Origin: Dimorphilus gyrociliatus
Taxonomy: Eukaryota; Animalia; Annelida
Length of the DNA: 64,000 bases
NCBI GenBank assembly: GCA_904063045.1
Contig: CAJFCJ010000006.1
Location: 992,001 to 1,056,000, forward strand
Reading direction: 5' to 3'
Shown in pieces: positions 22,825-31,909 of this stretch; within the stretch, counting starts at the first letter, position 1; each line of letters starts with the position of its first letter. A model generated the notes under the pieces. That model was given only the letters and a program-made list of their open reading frames with translations, ran no database searches and was not told where the DNA came from. The position numbers and the translations under genes are program-made.

Positions 22825-24470
22825 TATAGGCAATATGTTATAGGCCACCCTGTAGAATTTTAATTTTTGTAAATTTTAGATATGAAGATATTAGTGAATA
22901 ATTAGTTTGAATTGATAATAATAATTATTAATATGTACATTTTAATATCCTTAACAAAAAATTATCAAATAACAGTTTTTCTTTTATCAAATACGATTTT
23001 TGTAAATATACCTCGAAAAAAGGGGGCTCGTTAAAAAGGAGTCACGTTCTATTTTGTTAAATGTTTTACTTAAAAATCTATCTTATGACCTTGTTTTACA
23101 GCTGATATACATAGGTAATGATAATATATTATAAAATAATAGTAATAATAGTTTTAAATCTTTTTAATATTTTGTATGGCCACCCCTATTGAAAAGGCAT
23201 AGTCTCAGTCTCTTTGGAAAACTATTGAATAATTTTTTGATATATTCAGTTGGAATATTTTCGAATTCCTGCTCAGCTACCCTCCATAGATCATCTACAT
23301 TTGTGCACAGGTGTTTACTTACCCTACCTTTTAGAAATGACCACAAGTTTTCGATTGGGTTAAGGTCTGGACTCTGTGCTGGCCAGTCTTCCAGATACTT
23401 TACCCTCTCTTTCTTGAGGTAGTTTAGGGTACTCTTTGATGTATGGCAGGGAGCACCATCCTGCATCAAAATATGAGACCGATTATAATTCGGCAAAACG
23501 GATTTTTCAAGAATTTCCTGATATTTTTCGGAATTCAAGCTACCCTTGTACAGATGAATTCCTCTGCTGCCATCACTCTTTATAAATCCCCATATATTTA
23601 GGGAACCATTTGCCTCTTTAAAGGTTTTAATGCAATATTTGGCCTTGTACCTATCAGATGGATGCCTTCTGACAAACTGCCGTCGTTTTGGATATAAGTC
23701 TATCCTTGTTTCATCAGAAAACACAATGGCATTAATTTCATCTGTGGTCCAAGAGAGGAGTCTTTTGCAAAAATTGTGCCTATTTGATACATGCCTTTTT
23801 TTTAATAGGGGTTTTTTGGTTGCCACATAGCCTCTCAAGTTGTGCTTCCTTAAAATACTCTTGCATGTTGAAAGAGATATCACTGATGCAAAAAGAGAGG
23901 CTGATAAGATTTTTTTTGCACCCCAAAATGGATTTCTCTTTGATATCAGGCATAATTTTCTCTCATCTGCATCATTTAATTTGTGTGGTCTACCTGATTT
24001 TGATAAATTATCAATAGTTTTATGCAATTTGAACTTTTTCCAGATCCTCTGGGCACATCTGGAAATTTTTAGAACTTTCGCAGTTTTATTCAATGATAGC
24101 CCTTCTTGGTGTTTTCCAACAACCAAATGACGAAATCTATTATCAATTACCACCATTTTGAATAATAACCAAAGATACAATTATAATAAGACAATTTCCT
24201 TATTGATTAATGCACTTCAGCCCCCTAGTTTTCGATTTCTTAGAAAGTGACTCATTTTTGACGACCCCCCTTTTTTCGAGGTATATTTACAAAAATCGTA
24301 TTTGATAAAAGAAAAACTGTTATTTGATAATTTTTTGTTAAGGATATTAAAATGTACATATTAATAATTATTATTATCAATTCAAACTAATTATTCACTA
24401 ATATCTTCATATCTAAAATTTACAAAAATTAAAATTCTACAGGGTGGCCTATAACATATTGCCTATACTG
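22825..24470 (-). mobile_element. Tc1/mariner-superfamily DNA transposon with long (about 230 bp) terminal inverted repeats
   Basis: 22825-23051 is the reverse complement of 24241-24467; the outer ~200 bp appear identical. The right end is ..TATACTG followed by TA (24471-24472). A transposase ORF lies inside. Confidence 0.95.
23164..24156 (-). CDS. Tc1-like transposase, uninterrupted ORF, DD35E spacing
   Basis: SGRPHKL linker, TKKPLL, VFSDET, MQDGAPCH and WPAQSPDLNPIENLW. Probable ATG at 24156 (MVVIDNRF). Confidence 0.93.
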   Translation of the reverse strand: MVVIDNRFRHLVVGKHQEGLSLNKTAKVLKISRCAQRIWKKFKLHKTIDNLSKSGRPHKLNDADERKLCLISKRNPFWGAKKILSASLFASVISLSTCKSILRKHNLRGYVATKKPLLKKRHVSNRHNFCKRLLSWTTDEINAIVFSDETRIDLYPKRRQFVRRHPSDRYKAKYCIKTFKEANGSLNIWGFIKSDGSRGIHLYKGSLNSEKYQEILEKSVLPNYNRSHILMQDGAPCHTSKSTLNYLKKERVKYLEDWPAQSPDLNPIENLWSFLKGRVSKHLCTNVDDLWRVAEQEFENIPTEYIKKLFNSFPKRLRLCLFNRGGHTKY

Positions 24471-24825: not shown

Positions 24826-26980
24826 TTAATCCACTTCTTCAATTGTTGGTCCACTTCCAGAGCCTGCTCCGGGGGCACCTCCAGCTCCTGGGGCACCACC
24901 AGCTCCAGGGAATCCTCCTGGCATACCACCTGGCATACCTCCTGGGGCTCCGCCAGCTTGATATAATTTGGTTATTATTGGCATGCAAACACTTTCTAGC
25001 TCTTTTTGCTGGTGTTCAAATTCATCCTTTTCGGCACTCTGATTTGCATCCAACCAGGCAATAACAGCAGTGCACTTTTCTAAGATCTTCGTCTTATCTT
25101 CTTCACTGATTTTATCTTTGATTTTTTCATCTTCAATAGTTTGTTTCATATGGAAGGCATAGCTCTCTAGCGCATTCTTGCTCGAGATTCTTTCTCTTTG
25201 TTTTTCATCCTCTTGTTTGAATTCATCAGCCTCCCTTACCATCTTTTCAATATCTTCCTTTGACAATCTACCTTTATCGTTGGATATGGTAATTTTATTT
25301 TCTTTCATTGTGCTCTTATCAACGGCTGATACGTTGAGGATACCGTTTGCATCTATGTCAAAGGTAACTTCGATTTGTGGAACGCCTCTCGGTGCAGGGG
25401 GGATTCCAGATAATTCGAATTTACCCAATAAGTTGTTGTCTTTCGTCATCGATCTTTCACCTTCGTATACCTTTAGAAAAAAAACAATATTTAGAACAGA
25501 ATAACTAAGTTAGTCATAATTGAGCTAATAATGTAATTCAGACAGCCAAGGAAGATTTAGAACATCACAGATTTCAGGGGAAACCGCGAATGGTGGGCTA
25601 GCTAGACCGGTTTTCATCATAAGAGTTCGTTGATAATCTAAGTGTTCAAAGCCGACATACCTGAATTAAGACGCCAGGCTGATTATCACTGTAGGTGGTG
25701 AATGTTTGAGTTTGCTTAGTTGGAATGGTAGTATTTCTCTTAATCAAGGCAGTCATTACACCTCCAGCAGTTTCAATACCCAACGAAAGTGGTGCTACGT
25801 CAAGAAGGAGTAAATCTTGAACTTCTTCACTCTTATCCCCCATTAATATGGCTGCTTGGACAGCTGCACCATATGCAACAGCTTCATCCGGATTAATTGA
25901 CTTGTTCAATTCCTTGCCGTTAAAGAAATCTTGTAGAATTTTCTGAATTTTAGGAATTCTAGTGGATCCTCCAACCAGGACGATGTCGTGAATATCCGAC
26001 TTGTCCATTTTTGCATCTCTCAAAGACTTTTCAACCGGCTCCAATGTACCTCTAAATAAATCAGCGTTCAATTCCTCAAATCTCGCTCTGGTGATGCTGG
26101 TGTAGAAGTCAACACCTTCAAATAATGAGTCAATTTCAATTGATGCTTGGGCAGATGATGAAAGTGTTCTTTTTGCTCTTTCGCAGGCTGTTCTTAGACG
26201 ACGTACAGACCTCTTATTACTTGATATATCTTTCTTATGCTTCCTCTTGAATTCTTGAACAAAATGATTTACCATTCGATTGTCGAAATCTTCGCCGCCC
26301 AAATGAGTGTCTCCAGCAGTGGACTTCACTTCGAAGATTCCATCCTCAATAGTAAGTACAGATACATCAAATGTTCCACCGCCCAAATCAAAGATCAACA
26401 CATTTCTTTCTCCACCAACCTTTTTGTCCAAGCCGTAAGCAATGGCAGCGGCAGTTGGTTCGTTAATTATTCTAAGAACATTTAAACCTGCAATTGTGCC
26501 AGCATCTTTAGTAGCTTGACGTTGAGAATCATTGAAGTAGGCTGGAACTGTAACAACAGCATTAGCAATAGATTTTCCTAGATAAGCTTCTGCGGTCTCC
26601 CTCATTTTCGTCAAAACCATAGAAGATATTTCTTCCGGAAAGAATGTCTTTTTTTCGCCTTTGTATTCTACTTCAATTTTTGGCTTTCCACCATCGTTAA
26701 CAACATCGAAAGACCAATGTTTTTTGTCGCTTTGTACAGCAGGCTCTTCGTATCTTCTACCAATGAGTCGCTTAGCGTCAAAAACTGTGTTGGATGGATT
26801 CATAGCTACCTGGTTCTTTGCTGCGTCTCCGATAAGTCTTTCACTGTCAGTGAAAGCGACATAACTTGGAGTTGTTCTGTTTCCTTGATCATTAGCAATA
26901 ATTTCAACTTTTCCATGTTGAAATACACCAACACAAGAGTAGGTTGTTCCCAAATCGATTCCTATTGCTACTTTGGACAT
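24826..26980 (-). CDS. HSPA8: Cytosolic HSP70/HSC70, copy A, 654 aa (exons 26980-25661, 25470-24826; 5' UTR intron 26998-27120)
   Basis: [38 protein letters not shown] repeats and GPTIEEVD end. A 190-nt phase-0 intron at VLIQ|VYEG hosts U14, and a 5' UTR intron is present; both are HSC70-like traits. Confidence 0.95.
25538..25620 (-). ncRNA. SNORD14: U14 (SNORD14) box C/D snoRNA in the HSC70 intron
   Basis: Minus strand reads ATGATGA (C) ... CCATTCGCGGTTTCCC-CTGA (18S antisense + D') ... GTGATGT (C') ... CTTCCTTGGCTGT-CTGA (18S antisense + D). Both antisense elements closely match the conserved U14 elements CATTCGCAGTTTC and CTTCCTTGGATGT. The D box is about 67 nt from the 3' splice site. 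Confidence 0.88.
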
Positions 26981-27033
26981 TGTAGTTGCCGCTTATTCTG
27001 TGATAAAATATTACATAAAATAGCCATGATGCA

Positions 27034-27376
27034 TTCGAGAAAATTCGAAAATGCAACAGTCTTTATAATGATATTTAATGACTGTTCTAAGAGTTATTCC
27101 CATAAATATAAAGTACTTACGTTTGAATATTCAAAAAAATAAACTTTTTACAAAAAGCGCTAATACAGCAAGTTCTGCTTCAGAATGTGTGCAATTGAAA
27201 TGCCTTAACGAATATATAGCCGGCGGATGTGACGCGAGAGTTCGGGAACTTTCTAGAATTCTACCTGTCCAATTCCATTAGTTTGAGTGATATTTGGAAG
27301 GGGAACGCGTAACATAATACTTTTTATGCTAATTCTCGTAGCCGTATTTCCTGTCGAGTAATTTCGAGAAAGTTCT
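27034..27376 (-). promoter_or_regulatory. Heat-shock promoter of HSC70 copy A: TATA box plus heat-shock elements
   Basis: TATATATT at 27218-27211 (minus). Alternating nTTCn/nGAAn arrays: 4 units at 27240-27259, 3 units at 27362-27376, and 3 units at 27033-27047 inside the 5' UTR intron. Confidence 0.85.
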
Positions 27377-28099: not shown

Positions 28100-28500
28100 T
28101 CTCCGAATTCCTTAGAATCTTGGGGCTCCACCAGCTTTATAAAATTTGGTTATTATTAGCATACAAACGCTTTTTAGCTGTTTTTGCAGGGCGTACAATT
28201 TGTCCTTTTCGGCACTCTGATTGCAATCCAACCAACAATTAAATCAGTCTACTTTTCTAAGATCATTGTCTTATCTTCTTTACTAATTTTACATTTTAAT
28301 TTTTTCATGTTCGACAGTATGTTTCATTTGGAGAATATAGCTCCCCAGCGCATTCTTCCCTTTCCTTTTTGTTTAAAAACTCATCAGCCTCCTTCACCTT
28401 CCGCTCAATCTCTGCCTTTGACAATCTACCTCTAACGGTTGATACGCCAATGTTGATGTTTTCAATTTCTTCGCAGAAAGCAATATTCCAAACTTGGACT
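28100..28500 (-). pseudogene. Degenerate HSP70 C-terminal fragment with large internal deletion
   Basis: RGRLSKAEIERKVKEADEF and ITKFYKAGGAP are recognisable, with frameshifts and stops. It is fused directly to sequence homologous to the copy B 5' flank, so the NBD and most of the SBD are missing. Confidence 0.85.
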
Positions 28501-29027
28501 TGAAAAATGTACAATAAAAAATTTATGAAAGACGGTGAACAATACAATGGGGGTTTGTGTGTAAAACTTTACCCGTCCCAATCAATTGAATTAGACGATA
28601 TTATAAGAAGGGGAACTCGTACCGTAATCATAAAAACTTTAATGAGCGTTTTTGTAGCCACATTTCTTGTCGATCAATGTGTATTAAGAAAAAATAGACT
28701 TCTTTTGGCCTATATATTACATTATAAATAAATTCATATTTATTTAACTTAATTTTTAATAGTAATTATATTAAATTTTTTAAAAACAAATAGAAAATTG
28801 AAAGCTGTCAACGTTTATTCACAATGTTTGAATTTTGATTAGAAAGAGAATGTTGATGTTTTCAATAAAACATTTCTATTGATACTTTCCGTTAAATAAT
28901 AGATAGTACACGCAATGCAGTTGATTGTTTTTTATATAAATTGTTAGCTTTTGTATGAATATCTATTGAAATATAATCATTTTCTTTAGTACTCCAAATG
29001 ATATTTAATAAAATTTATAATTATGCT
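28470..29027. repeat. Duplicated HSP70 upstream module (also 31948-32392; more diverged at about 27265-27830)
   Basis: Near-identical to the copy B upstream region apart from an ~118 bp segment absent in B. Shared anchors such as gaaggggaac.cgta, taaataatagat and acgcaa.gcag also occur upstream of copy A. Confidence 0.85.
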
Positions 29028-29620
29028 TTGGATCATTTCTAGTACCAACTGGCCTCCTTACATATTCCCTTCGACGAGGATGGAGTTCAACTTTGCTCTC
29101 GTCACTGAATATTACTTTTCTCCACATATTTGAGCTCCATTTCAGTTTATGATTGCAAAACTGTATCTGTTTTTTAACTTGCTTCCTATTTAAAGCTGGC
29201 TTTTTAGCTGCAATTCTCCCATTTAATTTGTATTTGCAGAGAATTTTTTTTACACTAGAGAGTGAAATCTTAATTGGAACAGGTAAATTTTCTAGAACTT
29301 CTCTAGCTGTCCATTTTGGATTTGCTCTGCATGTTTTTGTGAGTTGTAACTCCATCCTCCTAGTGATTTTGCGTGGTCTACCAGATCTGTGTAAATCTTT
29401 TATTGTTCTAAATTCTTTAAATTTATTCTTGATATTCTGCACTGTCGCAGGGCTGCAATTAAATTTTGCTGCTATGCCTCGAATGGTCATTTTTGGCATT
29501 CCTAGGTAATTCAGGATACTTTTGCGAATTTCTAGTGATAGGCGACGCATTTTTTAATTATTTAAAAATAAATTGTATATTCCGAATTCTTTGTAGAACA
29601 GGGGTACAATATTTGTATGC
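29028..29620 (-). mobile_element. 3'-truncated Tc1-like element of a second family (transposase N-terminal half, ATG 29550)
   Basis: HTH region, SGRPRKIT, AAKKPAL and VIFSDESK; the frame runs into the HSP70 upstream module after DPK. The second D and the E are absent and no TIR pair was found. Outer boundary approximate. Confidence 0.85.
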
Positions 29621-29871: not shown

Positions 29872-31909
29872 TTACTTAGTACCGCGACTGTATAATTTGG
29901 TTATTATTGGCATGCAAACACTTTCTAGATCTTTTTGCTGGTGTTCAAATTCATCCTTTTCGGCATTCTGATTTGCATCCAACCAGGCAATAACTTCAGT
30001 GCACTTTTCTATGATGCTCGTCTTATCTTCTACACTGATTTTATCTTTGATTTTTTCATCTTCAACAGTTTGCTTCATACCGAAGGAATAGCTCTCTAGC
30101 GCATTCTTGCTCGAGATTCTTGCTTTATGCTCTTCATCCTCTTGTTTGAATTCATCAGCCTTTCTTACCATCTTTTCAATATCTTCCTTTGACAATCTAC
30201 CTTTATCGTTGGATATGGTAATTTTATTCTCTTTCGTTGTGCTCTTATCAACGGCTGATACGTTGAGGATACCGTTTACATCAATGTCAAAGGTAACTTC
30301 GATTTGTGGAACGCCTCTCGGTGCAGGGTGGATTCCAGATAATTCGAATTTACCCAATAAGTTGTTGTTTTTCGTCATCGATCTTTCACCTTCGTATACC
30401 TTCAGAAAAAAAACAATATTTAGAACAGAATAACTAAGTTAGTCATAATTGAGCTAATAATGTAATTCAGACAGCCAAGGCAGATTAAGAACATCACAGA
30501 TTTCAGGGGAAACCGCGAATGGTAGGCTAGTCAGAACGCCTTTTATCATGAGAGTTCGTTGATAATCTAAGTGTTCAAAGCCGACATACCTGAATTAAGA
30601 CGCCAGGCTGATTATCACTGTAGGTGGTGAATATATGAGTTTGCTTAGTTGAAATAGTAGAATTTCTCTTAATTAGTACACTCATTACACCTCCAGCAGT
30701 TTCAATACCTAACGAAAGTGGTACCACGTCAAGAAGGAGTAAATCTTGAATTTCTTTACTGCTATTCCCTATTAATATGGCTGCTTGGACAGCTGCACCA
30801 TATGCAACAGCTTCATCCGGATTAATTGACTTGTTCAATTCCTTGCCGTTAAAGAAATCTTGTAGAATTTTCTGAATTTTAGGAATTCTAGTGGATCCTC
30901 CAACCAGGACGATGTCGTGAATATCCGACTTGTCCATTTTTGCATCTCTCAAAGACTTTTCAACCGGCTCCAATGTACCTCTAAATAAATCAGCGTTCAA
31001 TTCCTCAAATCTCGCTCTGGTGATGCTGGTGTAGAAGTCAACACCTTCAAATAATGAGTCAATTTCAATTGATGCTTGGGCAGATGATGAAAGTGTTCTT
31101 TTTGCTCTTTCGCAGGCTGTTCTTAGACGACGTACAGACCTCTTATTACTTGATATATCTTTCTTATGCTTCCTCTTGAATTCTTGAACAAAATGATTTA
31201 CCATTCGATTGTCGAAATCTTCGCCGCCCAAATGAGTGTCTCCAGCAGTGGACTTCACTTCGAAGATTCCATCCTCAATAGTAAGTACAGATACATCAAA
31301 TGTTCCACCGCCCAAATCAAAGATCAACACATTTCTTTCTCCACCAACCTTTTTGTCCAAGCCGTAAGCAATGGCAGCGGCAGTTGGTTCGTTAATTATT
31401 CTAAGAACATTTAAACCTGCAATTGTGCCAGCATCTTTAGTAGCTTGACGTTGAGAATCATTGAAGTAGGCTGGAACTGTAACAACAGCATTAGCAATAG
31501 ATTTTCCTAGATAAGCTTCTGCGGTCTCCCTCATTTTCGTCAAAACCATAGAAGATATTTCTTCCGGAAAGAATGTCTTTTTTTCGCCTTTGTATTCTAC
31601 TTCAATTTTTGGCTTTCCACCATAGCCAACAACGTCGAAAGACCATTGTTTTTTGTCGCTTTGTACTATTGGATCTTCGTATCTTCTACCAATGAGTCGC
31701 TTAGCGTCAAAAACTGTGTTGGATGGATTCATAGCTACCTGGTTCTTTGCTGCGTCTCCGATAAGTCTTTCACTGTCAGTGAAAGCGACATAACTTGGAG
31801 TTGTTCTGTTTCCTTTATCATTAGCAATAATTTCAACTTTTCCTTTTTGGAATACACCAACACATGACTTGGATGTTCCCAAATCGATTCCAATTGCTAT
31901 GCCAGACAT
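29872..31909 (-). CDS. HSP70 copy B, 615 aa, lacking the GGMP/EEVD tail (exons 31909-30590, 30399-29872)
   Basis: Intact ORF with the same 190-nt intron as copy A. The core looks identical to A, the termini are diverged, and it ends [10 protein letters not shown]. Functional status unknown. Confidence 0.85.
30467..30549 (-). ncRNA. Second U14 copy with mutated C box (probably impaired)
   Basis: Same layout as 25538-25620, but the C box reads ATGATAA and the methylation guide reads CTGCCTTGGCTGT. Confidence 0.65.

What the first reader, a model, noticed from the sequence alone, without database searches (positions are those of the whole stretch)
25471..25660. U14 snoRNA in the only coding-region intron of HSC70
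Seen: full C/D'/C'/D layout with both U14 antisense elements, in a 190-nt intron (about three times the local norm) at VLIQ|VYEG. Known: vertebrate U14 is hosted in hsc70/HSPA8 introns, and U14 supports 18S processing and one 2'-O-methylation. From recall, this intron position also exists in vertebrate HSPA8. Inference: the host relationship predates the protostome-deuterostome split, and the snoRNA explains why this intron survived genome compaction. With HSEs upstream, U14 output would be heat-inducible.
Basis: partly seen in the sequence, partly recalled or inferred. Interest (0 to 1): 0.75.

Follow-up and report, generated by a model that had tools for sequence, protein, structure and literature searches.

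The report
U14 snoRNA inside annelid HSC70 intron
The one intron left in the coding part of this worm's HSC70 chaperone gene carries a real but unusually compact U14 small nucleolar RNA, at exactly the intron position where a snail and an unidentified environmental animal also keep U14 and where vertebrate HSC70 genes also have an intron, so a textbook vertebrate arrangement extends to protostomes.

Summary
Observation confirmed. A 190-nt GT..AG phase-0 intron (25471-25660, minus strand) splits HSC70 at VLIQ|VYEG. RNA contigs from four runs in three studies skip exactly these 190 nt. Inside lies an 89-nt box C/D RNA (25534-25622). It has C, D', C' and D boxes. Its domain A is a perfect 14-nt complement of the organism's own 18S (nt 77-90). 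Its domain B pairs with 18S 415-428 and puts C419, the conserved U14 methylation site, five nt upstream of box D.

Rfam SNORD14 matches over the whole model but below the gathering score (34.8 bits against 64; genome-wide E 6.5e-4). The shortfall comes from a lost internal hairpin.

The genome has only three U14 loci, all in this intron of three HSC70 paralogs. One of them, also in this window, is decaying.

The same intron of Biomphalaria HSC70, and of one environmental HSC70 gene, holds a U14. The Biomphalaria copy scores 74 bits. A bivalve carries five copies in the intron after aa 373. Four non-mammalian vertebrate HSC70 genes share the exact intron position but carry no U14.

An ancient host link is therefore supported but not proven at the level of this single intron. 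Heat inducibility is inferred from the HSEs only. Verdict: new member of a known kind, of moderate interest.

The parts
25534..25622 (-). U14 (SNORD14-like) box C/D snoRNA, 89 nt, copy A
   Evidence: RF00016 match over model positions 1-111, 34.8 bits, E 1.5e-5; genome-wide E 6.5e-4
25614..25620 (-). Box C, AUGAUGA
25580..25593 (-). Domain A, CCAUUCGCGGUUUC: perfect 14-nt Watson-Crick complement of own 18S nt 77-90
25574..25577 (-). Box D', CUGA
   Evidence: degenerate in the C17 paralog (CCGA)
25562..25567 (-). Box C', UGAUGU
25542..25555 (-). Domain B, UCUUCCUUGGCUGU: pairs with own 18S nt 415-428 and places C419 opposite the 5th nt upstream of box D. One C.U mismatch at position 4 and one G.U at the far end
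   Evidence: the C variant is absent from 121 environmental U14 cores
25538..25541 (-). Box D, CUGA
25471..25660 (-). Host intron, 190 nt, GT..AG, phase 0, at VLIQ|VYEG. The snoRNA starts 38 nt from the 5' splice site and ends 63 nt from the 3' splice site
   Evidence: Spliced out exactly in RNA contigs of 4 runs
25661..26980 (-). HSC70 copy A, coding exon 1 (440 aa)
24826..25470 (-). HSC70 copy A, coding exon 2 (214 aa, ends EEVD, plus stop)
27246..27261 (-). Proximal heat-shock element GAATTCtaGAAagTTC (perfect TTCnnGAAnnTTC trimer), 28 nt upstream of TATATAT at 27212-27218
   Evidence: sequence only
27363..27375 (-). Distal heat-shock element GAActTTCtcGAA (perfect trimer)
   Evidence: sequence only
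26998..27120 (-). Putative 5'UTR intron (GTAAGT...CACAG, 123 nt), ending 17 nt before the ATG
   Evidence: Sequence only; not verified with reads
30463..30557 (-). Decaying U14 copy B in the tandem HSC70 paralog: C box UGAUAA, domain B CUGCCUUGG
   Evidence: RF00016 28 bits. 10 of 11 intron differences from copy A fall inside the snoRNA
29872..31909 (-). HSC70 copy B: exon 1 30590-31909, intron 30400-30589, exon 2 cut short at about aa 173 with no EEVD. DLGTTYS motif changed to DLGTSKS

Best explanation
The element is a genuine, compact orthologue of U14/SNORD14 carried in the only coding-region intron of a highly expressed HSC70 gene.

Proposed mechanism:
1. The host pre-mRNA is transcribed from a TATA promoter that carries HSEs.
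2. The 190-nt intron is spliced out. This step is shown.
3. Box C/D core proteins assemble on the C/D kink-turn during splicing. The snoRNA ends 63 nt from the 3' splice site, close to the position reported as preferred for C/D snoRNAs in human introns. This step is inferred.
4. Exonucleases trim the debranched lariat to an RNA of roughly 85-90 nt. This step is inferred.
5. In the nucleolus, domain A pairs with 18S nt 77-90 to chaperone early pre-18S processing. Domain B with box D directs fibrillarin to 2'-O-methylate C419, the equivalent of human Cm462 and yeast Cm414. This step is inferred from complementarity. The C.U mismatch next to the target may weaken the methylation.

The three HSC70 paralog introns hold the genome's only U14 genes. 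The need for U14 therefore plausibly explains two things: why this intron was kept while the other ancestral HSC70 introns were lost, and why it cannot shrink to the roughly 66-nt norm (38 + 89 + 63 nt).

The U14-HSC70 host link is shared with molluscs and, according to the literature, with mammals. It most likely dates at least to the bilaterian ancestor.
For: Identity:
- RF00016 matches over the whole model, E 1.5e-5 locally and 6.5e-4 genome-wide.
- Domain A is a perfect 14-nt complement of own 18S nt 77-90. Its G, where the Rfam consensus has A, pairs with a C in the local 18S.
- Domain B places C419 at the fifth position upstream of box D. This matches the conserved target listed in PMC3511168.

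Selection:
- Between copy A and the C17 paralog the intron flanks no longer align, yet domain A and the block CUAAAUCUUCCUUGGCUGUCUGA are invariant.

Expression and splicing:
- RNA contigs of 4 runs in 3 studies skip exactly 25471-25660.

Dependence on this intron:
- The genome has only 3 U14 loci, all in this intron.
- The HSP70 paralogs on C20 and C14 read through the site without an intron.

Homology of the arrangement:
- Biomphalaria has SNORD14 at 74.2 bits in the same Q|V phase-0 intron. Potamilus has five copies at 70-73 bits in the intron after aa 373.
- The environmental locus L097 has a U14 in the same intron, which is 214 nt long by exact junctions.
- Four vertebrate genes share the exact intron position.
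- Only 1 of 80 environmental U14 loci lies in an HSP70 gene, so co-occurrence by chance is unlikely.

Intron placement:
- Human C/D snoRNAs lie preferentially about 50 nt upstream of the branch point (PMC5519232).
Against: - The score is below Rfam's gathering threshold (34.8 against 64; one search found nothing).
- No read-level evidence shows a processed small RNA. Only assembled contigs were available, and they cover the exons but not the intron.
- The terminal stem is weak and the fold is not distinguishable from shuffles.
- Domain B has a C.U mismatch next to the methylation site, which was not seen in any of 121 other U14 cores.
- U14 is absent from the HSC70 genes of Helobdella, Oedothorax and Hetaerina, and from the four vertebrate loci sampled.
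- U14 sits in different HSC70 introns in different taxa, so movement within the gene is an alternative to strict orthology of this intron's occupancy.
- CAG|GT is a proto-splice site, so parallel intron gain cannot formally be excluded.
Confidence: 0.85

Rival explanations
1. It is a real U14, but its presence in this particular intron is not orthologous to the mammalian copy. U14 copies move or duplicate among HSC70 introns, or into HSC70, independently in different lineages. The match of position with molluscs and mammals would then reflect repeated colonisation of a large, highly expressed intron.
For: U14 lies after aa 137 and 441 in Biomphalaria, after aa 373 (five copies) in Potamilus, after aa 231 and 441 in L097, and in the 5'UTR intron in Daphnia. 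Leech, spider, damselfly and four vertebrate HSC70 genes have none. snoRNA mobility is well documented (PMC3511168; PMC2655684).
Against: The 441|442 intron is the recurrent site: Dimorphilus (three paralogs), Biomphalaria, L097 and, from memory, mammalian intron 6. Only 1 of 80 environmental U14 loci lies in any HSP70 gene, so HSC70 is not a generic landing site.
Confidence: 0.25
2. It is a decayed U14 relic that is no longer processed or functional. The intron persists for other reasons, such as splicing-dependent expression.
For: Sub-threshold Rfam score, lost internal hairpin, weak terminal stem, C.U mismatch in domain B. The neighbouring copy B is clearly decaying. No small-RNA evidence.
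Against: Boxes C and D are canonical. Domains A and B are invariant between copy A and the diverged C17 intron. These are the only U14 candidates in the genome, and U14 is essential for 18S production in the organisms where it was tested (PMC7277114). Copy B shows what decay looks like: it has hits in box C and in domain B, and copy A has none.
Confidence: 0.05
3. It is a chance resemblance of AT-rich intron sequence to C/D box motifs.
For: Short C and D boxes are common. There was no hit at the gathering threshold.
Against: Genome-wide E 6.5e-4 and 2.5e-5 for two paralogous copies. The 14-nt and 14-bp complementarities fall exactly at the two canonical U14 target sites in own 18S. The pattern has 0 hits in the reversed control. 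A homologous element lies in the same intron of a snail.
Confidence: 0.01

Closest known systems
Vertebrate U14 / SNORD14C-E in introns of HSPA8 (hsc70) (Liu & Maxwell 1990; Leverette et al. 1992, as cited in PMC7277114; mouse Snord14c/d in Hspa8, PMC5454292)
   Same: Box C/D snoRNA with domain A (18S processing) and domain B plus box D (18S Cm462 equivalent). Encoded in an intron of the constitutive HSP70 gene. The host intron position Q441|V442, phase 0, is identical to a vertebrate HSC70 intron.
   Different: 89 nt, with the internal hairpin between the domains deleted (spacer 26-27 nt, against 30 nt or more in 121 other U14 cores). G instead of A in domain A, matching a C in the local 18S. 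C instead of A in domain B, giving a C.U mismatch. One copy per gene rather than three. The host gene has lost all other CDS introns. Scores below the Rfam gathering threshold.
Mollusc HSC70-hosted SNORD14 (Biomphalaria glabrata L013, Potamilus streckersoni L014; found here)
   Same: Same host gene. In Biomphalaria the same intron and the same domain A G variant. The snoRNA ends about 80 nt before the 3' splice site in the snail and 63 nt here.
   Different: Mollusc copies are about 100 nt, keep the internal hairpin and a 6-bp terminal stem, have the canonical GGAUGU in domain B, and pass the Rfam threshold (66-74 bits). There are several copies per gene.
Yeast U14 (snR128)
   Same: Domains A and B and the methylation target (Cm414) are conserved (PMC3511168; PMC7277114).
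   Different: The yeast RNA is not hosted in an HSP70 intron and carries the essential Y domain between the two rRNA-pairing regions (PMC7277114). Nothing like it is present here.

Membership tests
U14 / SNORD14 (Rfam RF00016) | Score at or above the curated gathering threshold (64 bits) | tested here: not met
   34.8 bits for copy A, 39.9 for C17, 28 for copy B. The match covers the whole model (1-111). The shortfall comes from the deleted internal hairpin and divergent spacers.
U14 / SNORD14 (Rfam RF00016) | Canonical box C (RUGAUGA) near the 5' end and box D (CUGA) near the 3' end | tested here: met
   AUGAUGA at 25620-25614 and CUGA at 25541-25538
U14 / SNORD14 (Rfam RF00016) | Domain A: about 13-14 nt complementary to the 5' region of 18S rRNA | tested here: met
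   14/14 Watson-Crick pairs with own 18S nt 77-90, identical in 3 rDNA copies
U14 / SNORD14 (Rfam RF00016) | Domain B next to box D, complementary to 18S so that the conserved C (human 462, yeast 414) lies opposite the 5th nt upstream of box D | tested here: met
   Pairs with 18S 415-428 with C419 at position 5. There is one C.U mismatch at position 4 and one G.U pair. Target homology per PMC3511168.
U14 / SNORD14 (Rfam RF00016) | Accumulates as a stable nucleolar RNA of roughly 85-100 nt bound by fibrillarin/Nop56/Nop58/Snu13 | not testable with these tools
   Only assembled contigs were available. They show splicing but cannot show small RNAs.
U14 / SNORD14 (Rfam RF00016) | Required for 18S rRNA production and for methylation of the target C | not testable with these tools
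   Needs depletion experiments or RiboMeth-seq
HSPA8/HSC70-hosted intronic U14 arrangement | The snoRNA lies on the sense strand inside a spliced intron of a cytosolic HSC70 gene | tested here: met
   The host protein is 90-95% identical to animal HSC70s and ends in EEVD. The intron is removed exactly in RNA contigs.
HSPA8/HSC70-hosted intronic U14 arrangement | The host intron is positionally homologous to a U14-bearing intron of vertebrate HSPA8 | tested here: inconclusive
   The position is identical to a vertebrate HSC70 intron in 4 species, but none of those loci carried U14. That mammalian intron 6 both lies at this position and hosts U14 rests on memory of Liu & Maxwell 1990, which was not readable.

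The most novel reading that the evidence does not exclude
The pairing of U14 with the Q441|V442 intron of HSC70 is a single-intron snoRNA-host association inherited from the bilaterian ancestor, more than 550 Myr ago. In this miniaturised annelid it has become the sole source of an essential snoRNA, and that is what stopped this intron from being lost or shrunk. The lineage-specific C.U mismatch next to the target C, conserved in both intact copies, would mean that Dimorphilus has weakened or lost Cm419 while keeping domain B for a pairing role without methylation.
Probability: 0.35. Interest if true: 0.5.

Novelty: new member of a known kind. Interest (0 to 1): 0.4.

Why it matters
U14 in hsc70 was the founding example of an intron-encoded snoRNA. 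Finding it in the same intron position in an annelid, a snail and an unidentified environmental animal suggests that this snoRNA-host pairing is among the oldest traceable at the resolution of a single intron. That contrasts with the prevailing picture of snoRNA mobility.

It also gives a concrete, testable case of a non-coding RNA constraining both intron loss and intron size in a compacted animal genome: 190 nt = 38 + 89 + 63, against a median of 66 nt.

On the practical side, the curated Rfam threshold misses the only U14 genes of this genome. Automated annotation would therefore wrongly report that an essential snoRNA is missing.

Tried and rejected
- Rfam at the gathering threshold on the whole window found nothing. 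The hit appears only in E-value mode.
- The RF01960 search of the own genome failed for technical reasons. I located 18S with a primer-like pattern instead.
- L004-L007, the weaker RF00016 candidates, are not U14. L004 lacks domain A.
- A vertebrate positive control by sequence failed five times. Xenopus tropicalis, Bombina, Lerista and Sceloporus HSC70-type genes have the intron but no U14. The Pangasius protein was a misannotated hsp70 of the intron-poor type.
- Liu & Maxwell 1990 is not held.
- Nine paper searches found no report of U14 in an invertebrate hsc70. That is not proof that none exists, because older subscription papers on mollusc or insect hsc70 genes are not in the library.
- RPS13, the second vertebrate U14 host (from memory), is a single uninterrupted 148-aa open frame in this genome. 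None of the genome's three U14 loci lies on its contig (C192), and none of the 80 environmental U14 loci has RPS13 exons.
- The damselfly domain-A-like match is not a snoRNA.
- The organism of L097 could not be identified because HSC70 is too conserved.
- Folding gave no informative structure.
I left out the step of searching the joined protein.
Full report
WHAT IS THERE

The gene lies on the minus strand. An uninterrupted 440-codon frame (26980..25661) ends in ...NQPGVLIQ and is followed by gtatgt. After 190 nt the intron ends in ...ttctaaag. The frame then resumes with [10 protein letters not shown]... and runs 214 codons to GPTIEEVD and the stop at 24826. Exon 1 aligns over 100% of its length to animal HSC70 proteins at 90-95% identity.

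Contigs assembled from four RNA runs in three studies cover both exon flanks and skip exactly 190 nt. The ends are CT..AC on the + strand, which is GT..AG on the gene strand. The intron at 25471-25660 is therefore real, is spliced precisely, and is the only intron in the coding region. A second, 123-nt intron in the 5'UTR (27120..26998) is predicted from sequence only.

THE snoRNA

Rfam at gathering thresholds reports nothing in the window. In E-value mode on the 431-nt region, RF00016 (SNORD14) matches 25534-25622 on the minus strand across the whole model (positions 1-111). The score is 34.8 bits with E 1.5e-5. Against the whole 77.9-Mb genome the same hit has E 6.5e-4.

The elements, verified by extraction:
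- Box C, AUGAUGA: 25620-25614
- Domain A, CCAUUCGCGGUUUC: 25593-25580
- Box D', CUGA: 25577-25574
- Box C', UGAUGU: 25567-25562
- Domain B, UCUUCCUUGGCUGU: 25555-25542
- Box D, CUGA: 25541-25538

FUNCTIONAL TEST AGAINST THE ORGANISM'S OWN rRNA

I located the rDNA with an 18S 5'-end pattern. It forms repeats of about 9.1 kb on C5, C164 and C223.

Domain A is a perfect 14-nt Watson-Crick complement of 18S nt 77-90, GAAACCGCGAAUGG. It carries G where the Rfam consensus, and 113 of 121 environmental U14 cores, carry A. The local 18S has C at the paired position, so the pair is G-C. I did not fetch other 18S sequences, so I do not claim a compensatory change.

Domain B pairs with 18S nt 415-428 and puts C419 opposite the fifth nucleotide upstream of box D. 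This is the conserved U14 target, listed as human Cm462, yeast Cm414 and Arabidopsis Cm416 (PMC3511168).

One oddity: position 4 upstream of box D is C, opposite U418, which is a mismatch directly next to the target. All three genomic copies share it. None of 121 environmental U14 cores has C there (120 have A, 1 has G). From memory, mismatches beside the target reduce guided methylation. Whether C419 is still methylated is open.

WHY THE RFAM SCORE IS LOW

The spacer between the two domains is 26-27 nt here. It is 30-50 nt in all 121 environmental cores and about 42 nt in the molluscs. The alignment shows 27 model positions, which include the consensus internal hairpin drawn, replaced by 6 nt. 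The terminal stem is also minimal, and the fold is no better than shuffled sequence. This is a stripped-down U14, not a doubtful one.

OTHER COPIES AND SELECTION

The genome holds exactly three loci with domain A followed by domain B and box D (0 in the reversed control). These are the same three found with RF00016. All three lie in the VLIQ|VYEG intron of an HSC70 paralog:
- Copy A: this finding.
- Copy B: 30463-30557, in a tandem paralog at 29872-31909.
- A copy on contig C17: L001, intron of 188 nt, 39.9 bits.

Between copy A and C17 the intron flanks have diverged beyond alignment. Domain A and the 23-nt block CUAAAUCUUCCUUGGCUGUCUGA are invariant. That is the signature of purifying selection.

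Copy B shows what decay looks like. Its host gene lost its C-terminus: exon 2 matches only to aa 173 and there is no EEVD. Its DLGTTYS motif reads DLGTSKS. In the snoRNA, box C is UGAUAA and domain B is CUGCCUUGG. Ten of the 11 intron differences from copy A fall within the 89-nt snoRNA (Fisher p = 0.003). I cannot explain that concentration.

The more distant HSP70 paralogs on C20 (78% identity) and C14 (68%) read straight through the site in open frames of 633-634 aa. The intron exists only where U14 does.

COMPARATIVE EVIDENCE

I fetched HSC70 gene loci of other animals through the proteins found, then mapped their exons.

- Vertebrates. Xenopus tropicalis, Bombina, Lerista and Sceloporus genes all have CDS introns after aa 68, 137, 188, 373, 441, 507 and 585. 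The 441|442 intron lies after the Gln codon in phase 0, identical to the nucleotide with the annelid intron.
- Gastropod. Biomphalaria glabrata shares six of these positions. It carries SNORD14 above the Rfam threshold in two introns: 66.3 bits after aa 137, and 74.2 bits after aa 441, which is the same intron as here.
- Bivalve. Potamilus has five copies at 70-73 bits in its 4.1-kb intron after aa 373.
- Crustacean. Daphnia magna has a C/D element with a U14-type domain A, but no recognisable domain B, in its 5'UTR intron (28 bits).
- No U14. The Helobdella gene (introns after aa 373 and 585), the Oedothorax gene (intronless) and the Hetaerina gene have none.
- Environmental sample. An unbiased scan of metagenome contigs for the U14 signature matched 108 stretches, of which 80 were returned as loci. 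Only one (L097) has HSP70 exons. There, U14 sits after aa 231 and again in the 441|442 intron, which is 214 nt long by exact junctions. Half of the 80 loci had at least 700 nt on both sides of a U14 core. HSC70 is therefore not a generic U14 host, and that makes the recurrence of this one intron meaningful.

LIMITS OF THE ANCIENT-HOST CLAIM

None of the four vertebrate loci I could fetch carries U14. They may be U14-free paralogs.

The vertebrate case rests on the literature. Three U14 copies lie in hsc70 introns of human, mouse and rat (PMC7277114, citing Liu & Maxwell 1990). Mouse Snord14c and Snord14d lie in Hspa8 (PMC5454292). That the mammalian copies lie in introns 5, 6 and 8 is from my memory. 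Counting the 5'UTR intron as intron 1, those correspond to aa 373, 441 and 585. The original paper was not readable.

U14 clearly moves or duplicates among HSC70 introns, and CAG|GT is a proto-splice site. My reading is that the gene-level host association is very probably ancestral to bilaterians. Orthology at the level of this particular intron is likely but unproven.

WHY THE INTRON IS LONG, AND WHY IT SURVIVED

The assembly size (77.9 Mb, against the published 73.8 Mb) and the short introns fit that. I did not verify the species independently.

The genome paper gives a median intron of 66 bp and attributes compaction to intron loss (PMC7854359). Here 190 nt is made up of 38 nt from the 5' splice site to the snoRNA, 89 nt of snoRNA, and 63 nt to the 3' splice site. 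The C17 copy has 61 nt after the snoRNA, and Biomphalaria has about 80.

Human C/D snoRNAs lie preferentially about 50 nt upstream of the branch point, and their assembly is coupled to splicing (PMC5519232). The candidate branch sites are UGACUAAC (A at 25510) and UUCUAAA (about 25491). The length is therefore close to the minimum for this architecture.

Copy A has lost every other ancestral CDS intron. The three HSC70 introns are the only U14 sources in the genome. It is not a general rule: the C17 paralog also keeps a short intron after ...WLDANQ, the vertebrate aa-585 position, and that intron holds no snoRNA.

PROMOTER

Two perfect trimeric heat-shock elements are present. TTCtaGAAagTTC lies at 27258-27246, 28 nt upstream of TATATAT. 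GAActTTCtcGAA lies at 27375-27363. Heat-inducible U14 output is a reasonable inference, but I did not test it.

VERDICT

The element is a new, unusually compact member of a known kind. The protostome extension of the classic U14/hsc70 arrangement was not found in the held literature. It is an extension of a known arrangement, not a surprise.

PROCEDURAL NOTES

Noticed in passing
window 30400-30589 compared with 25471-25660: The introns of tandem paralogs A and B are both 190 nt and differ at 11 sites. Ten of these fall inside the 89-nt snoRNA, and eight cluster in intron positions 40-66 (Fisher p = 0.003). The 101 nt of flank differ at 1 site, while the exons differ by 3.3-6.9%. Neutral decay alone should not spare the flanks, so patchy gene conversion or a local mutation cluster is possible.
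   Followed up: partly
window 28121-28451 (-), 23164-24180 (-), 29005-29550 (-): A degenerate HSP70 C-terminal fragment (about 50% identity, frameshifted) lies between copies A and B. Two open frames that look like Tc1/mariner-type transposases by eye (not scanned against any family library) flank the HSC70 copies. The one at 29005-29550 lies just downstream of copy B's truncated 3' end and may have caused the truncation.
   Followed up: partly
L014 6433-9324 (Potamilus streckersoni HSC70): Five SNORD14 copies above the Rfam threshold, spaced 590-820 nt apart, lie inside one annotated 4.1-kb intron after aa 373. Several snoRNAs in one intron is unusual for animals. Unannotated non-coding exons between them are possible.
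   Followed up: no
L015 331-422 (Daphnia magna Hsc70-4, 5'UTR intron): A C/D-type element with box C GUGAUGU, a U14-like domain A (ACCAUUCGCGGUU) and box D, but with UUAACCCACGU upstream of box D in place of domain B. It may be a U14 that kept only the processing function.
   Followed up: partly
L011, L017, L018, L020 (Xenopus tropicalis, Bombina, Lerista, Sceloporus HSC70-type genes): All four keep the classic seven HSC70 CDS intron positions, but none contains U14. In three of the four the introns after aa 373 and 441 are long (529-943 nt), and in Bombina they run to several kb. They are either U14-free paralogs or cases of U14 loss from hsc70 outside mammals.
   Followed up: partly
window 27033-27050 (-), inside the putative 5'UTR intron: A further HSE-like cluster, TTCGAAttTTCtcGAA, lies inside the predicted 5'UTR intron of HSC70 copy A.
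   Followed up: no
L004 (G000:C2:1371368-1371460, minus strand): A different box C/D snoRNA candidate with GUGAUGAU and CUGA but no U14 domain A. It was picked up weakly by the SNORD14 model (25.4 bits). Its target was not examined.
   Followed up: no
L022-L101 (metagenome contigs): Many environmental contigs carry 2-5 tandem U14 copies spaced 240-1600 nt apart, with no HSP70 or RPS13 exons. Their hosts are unidentified genes or non-coding arrays.
   Followed up: partly
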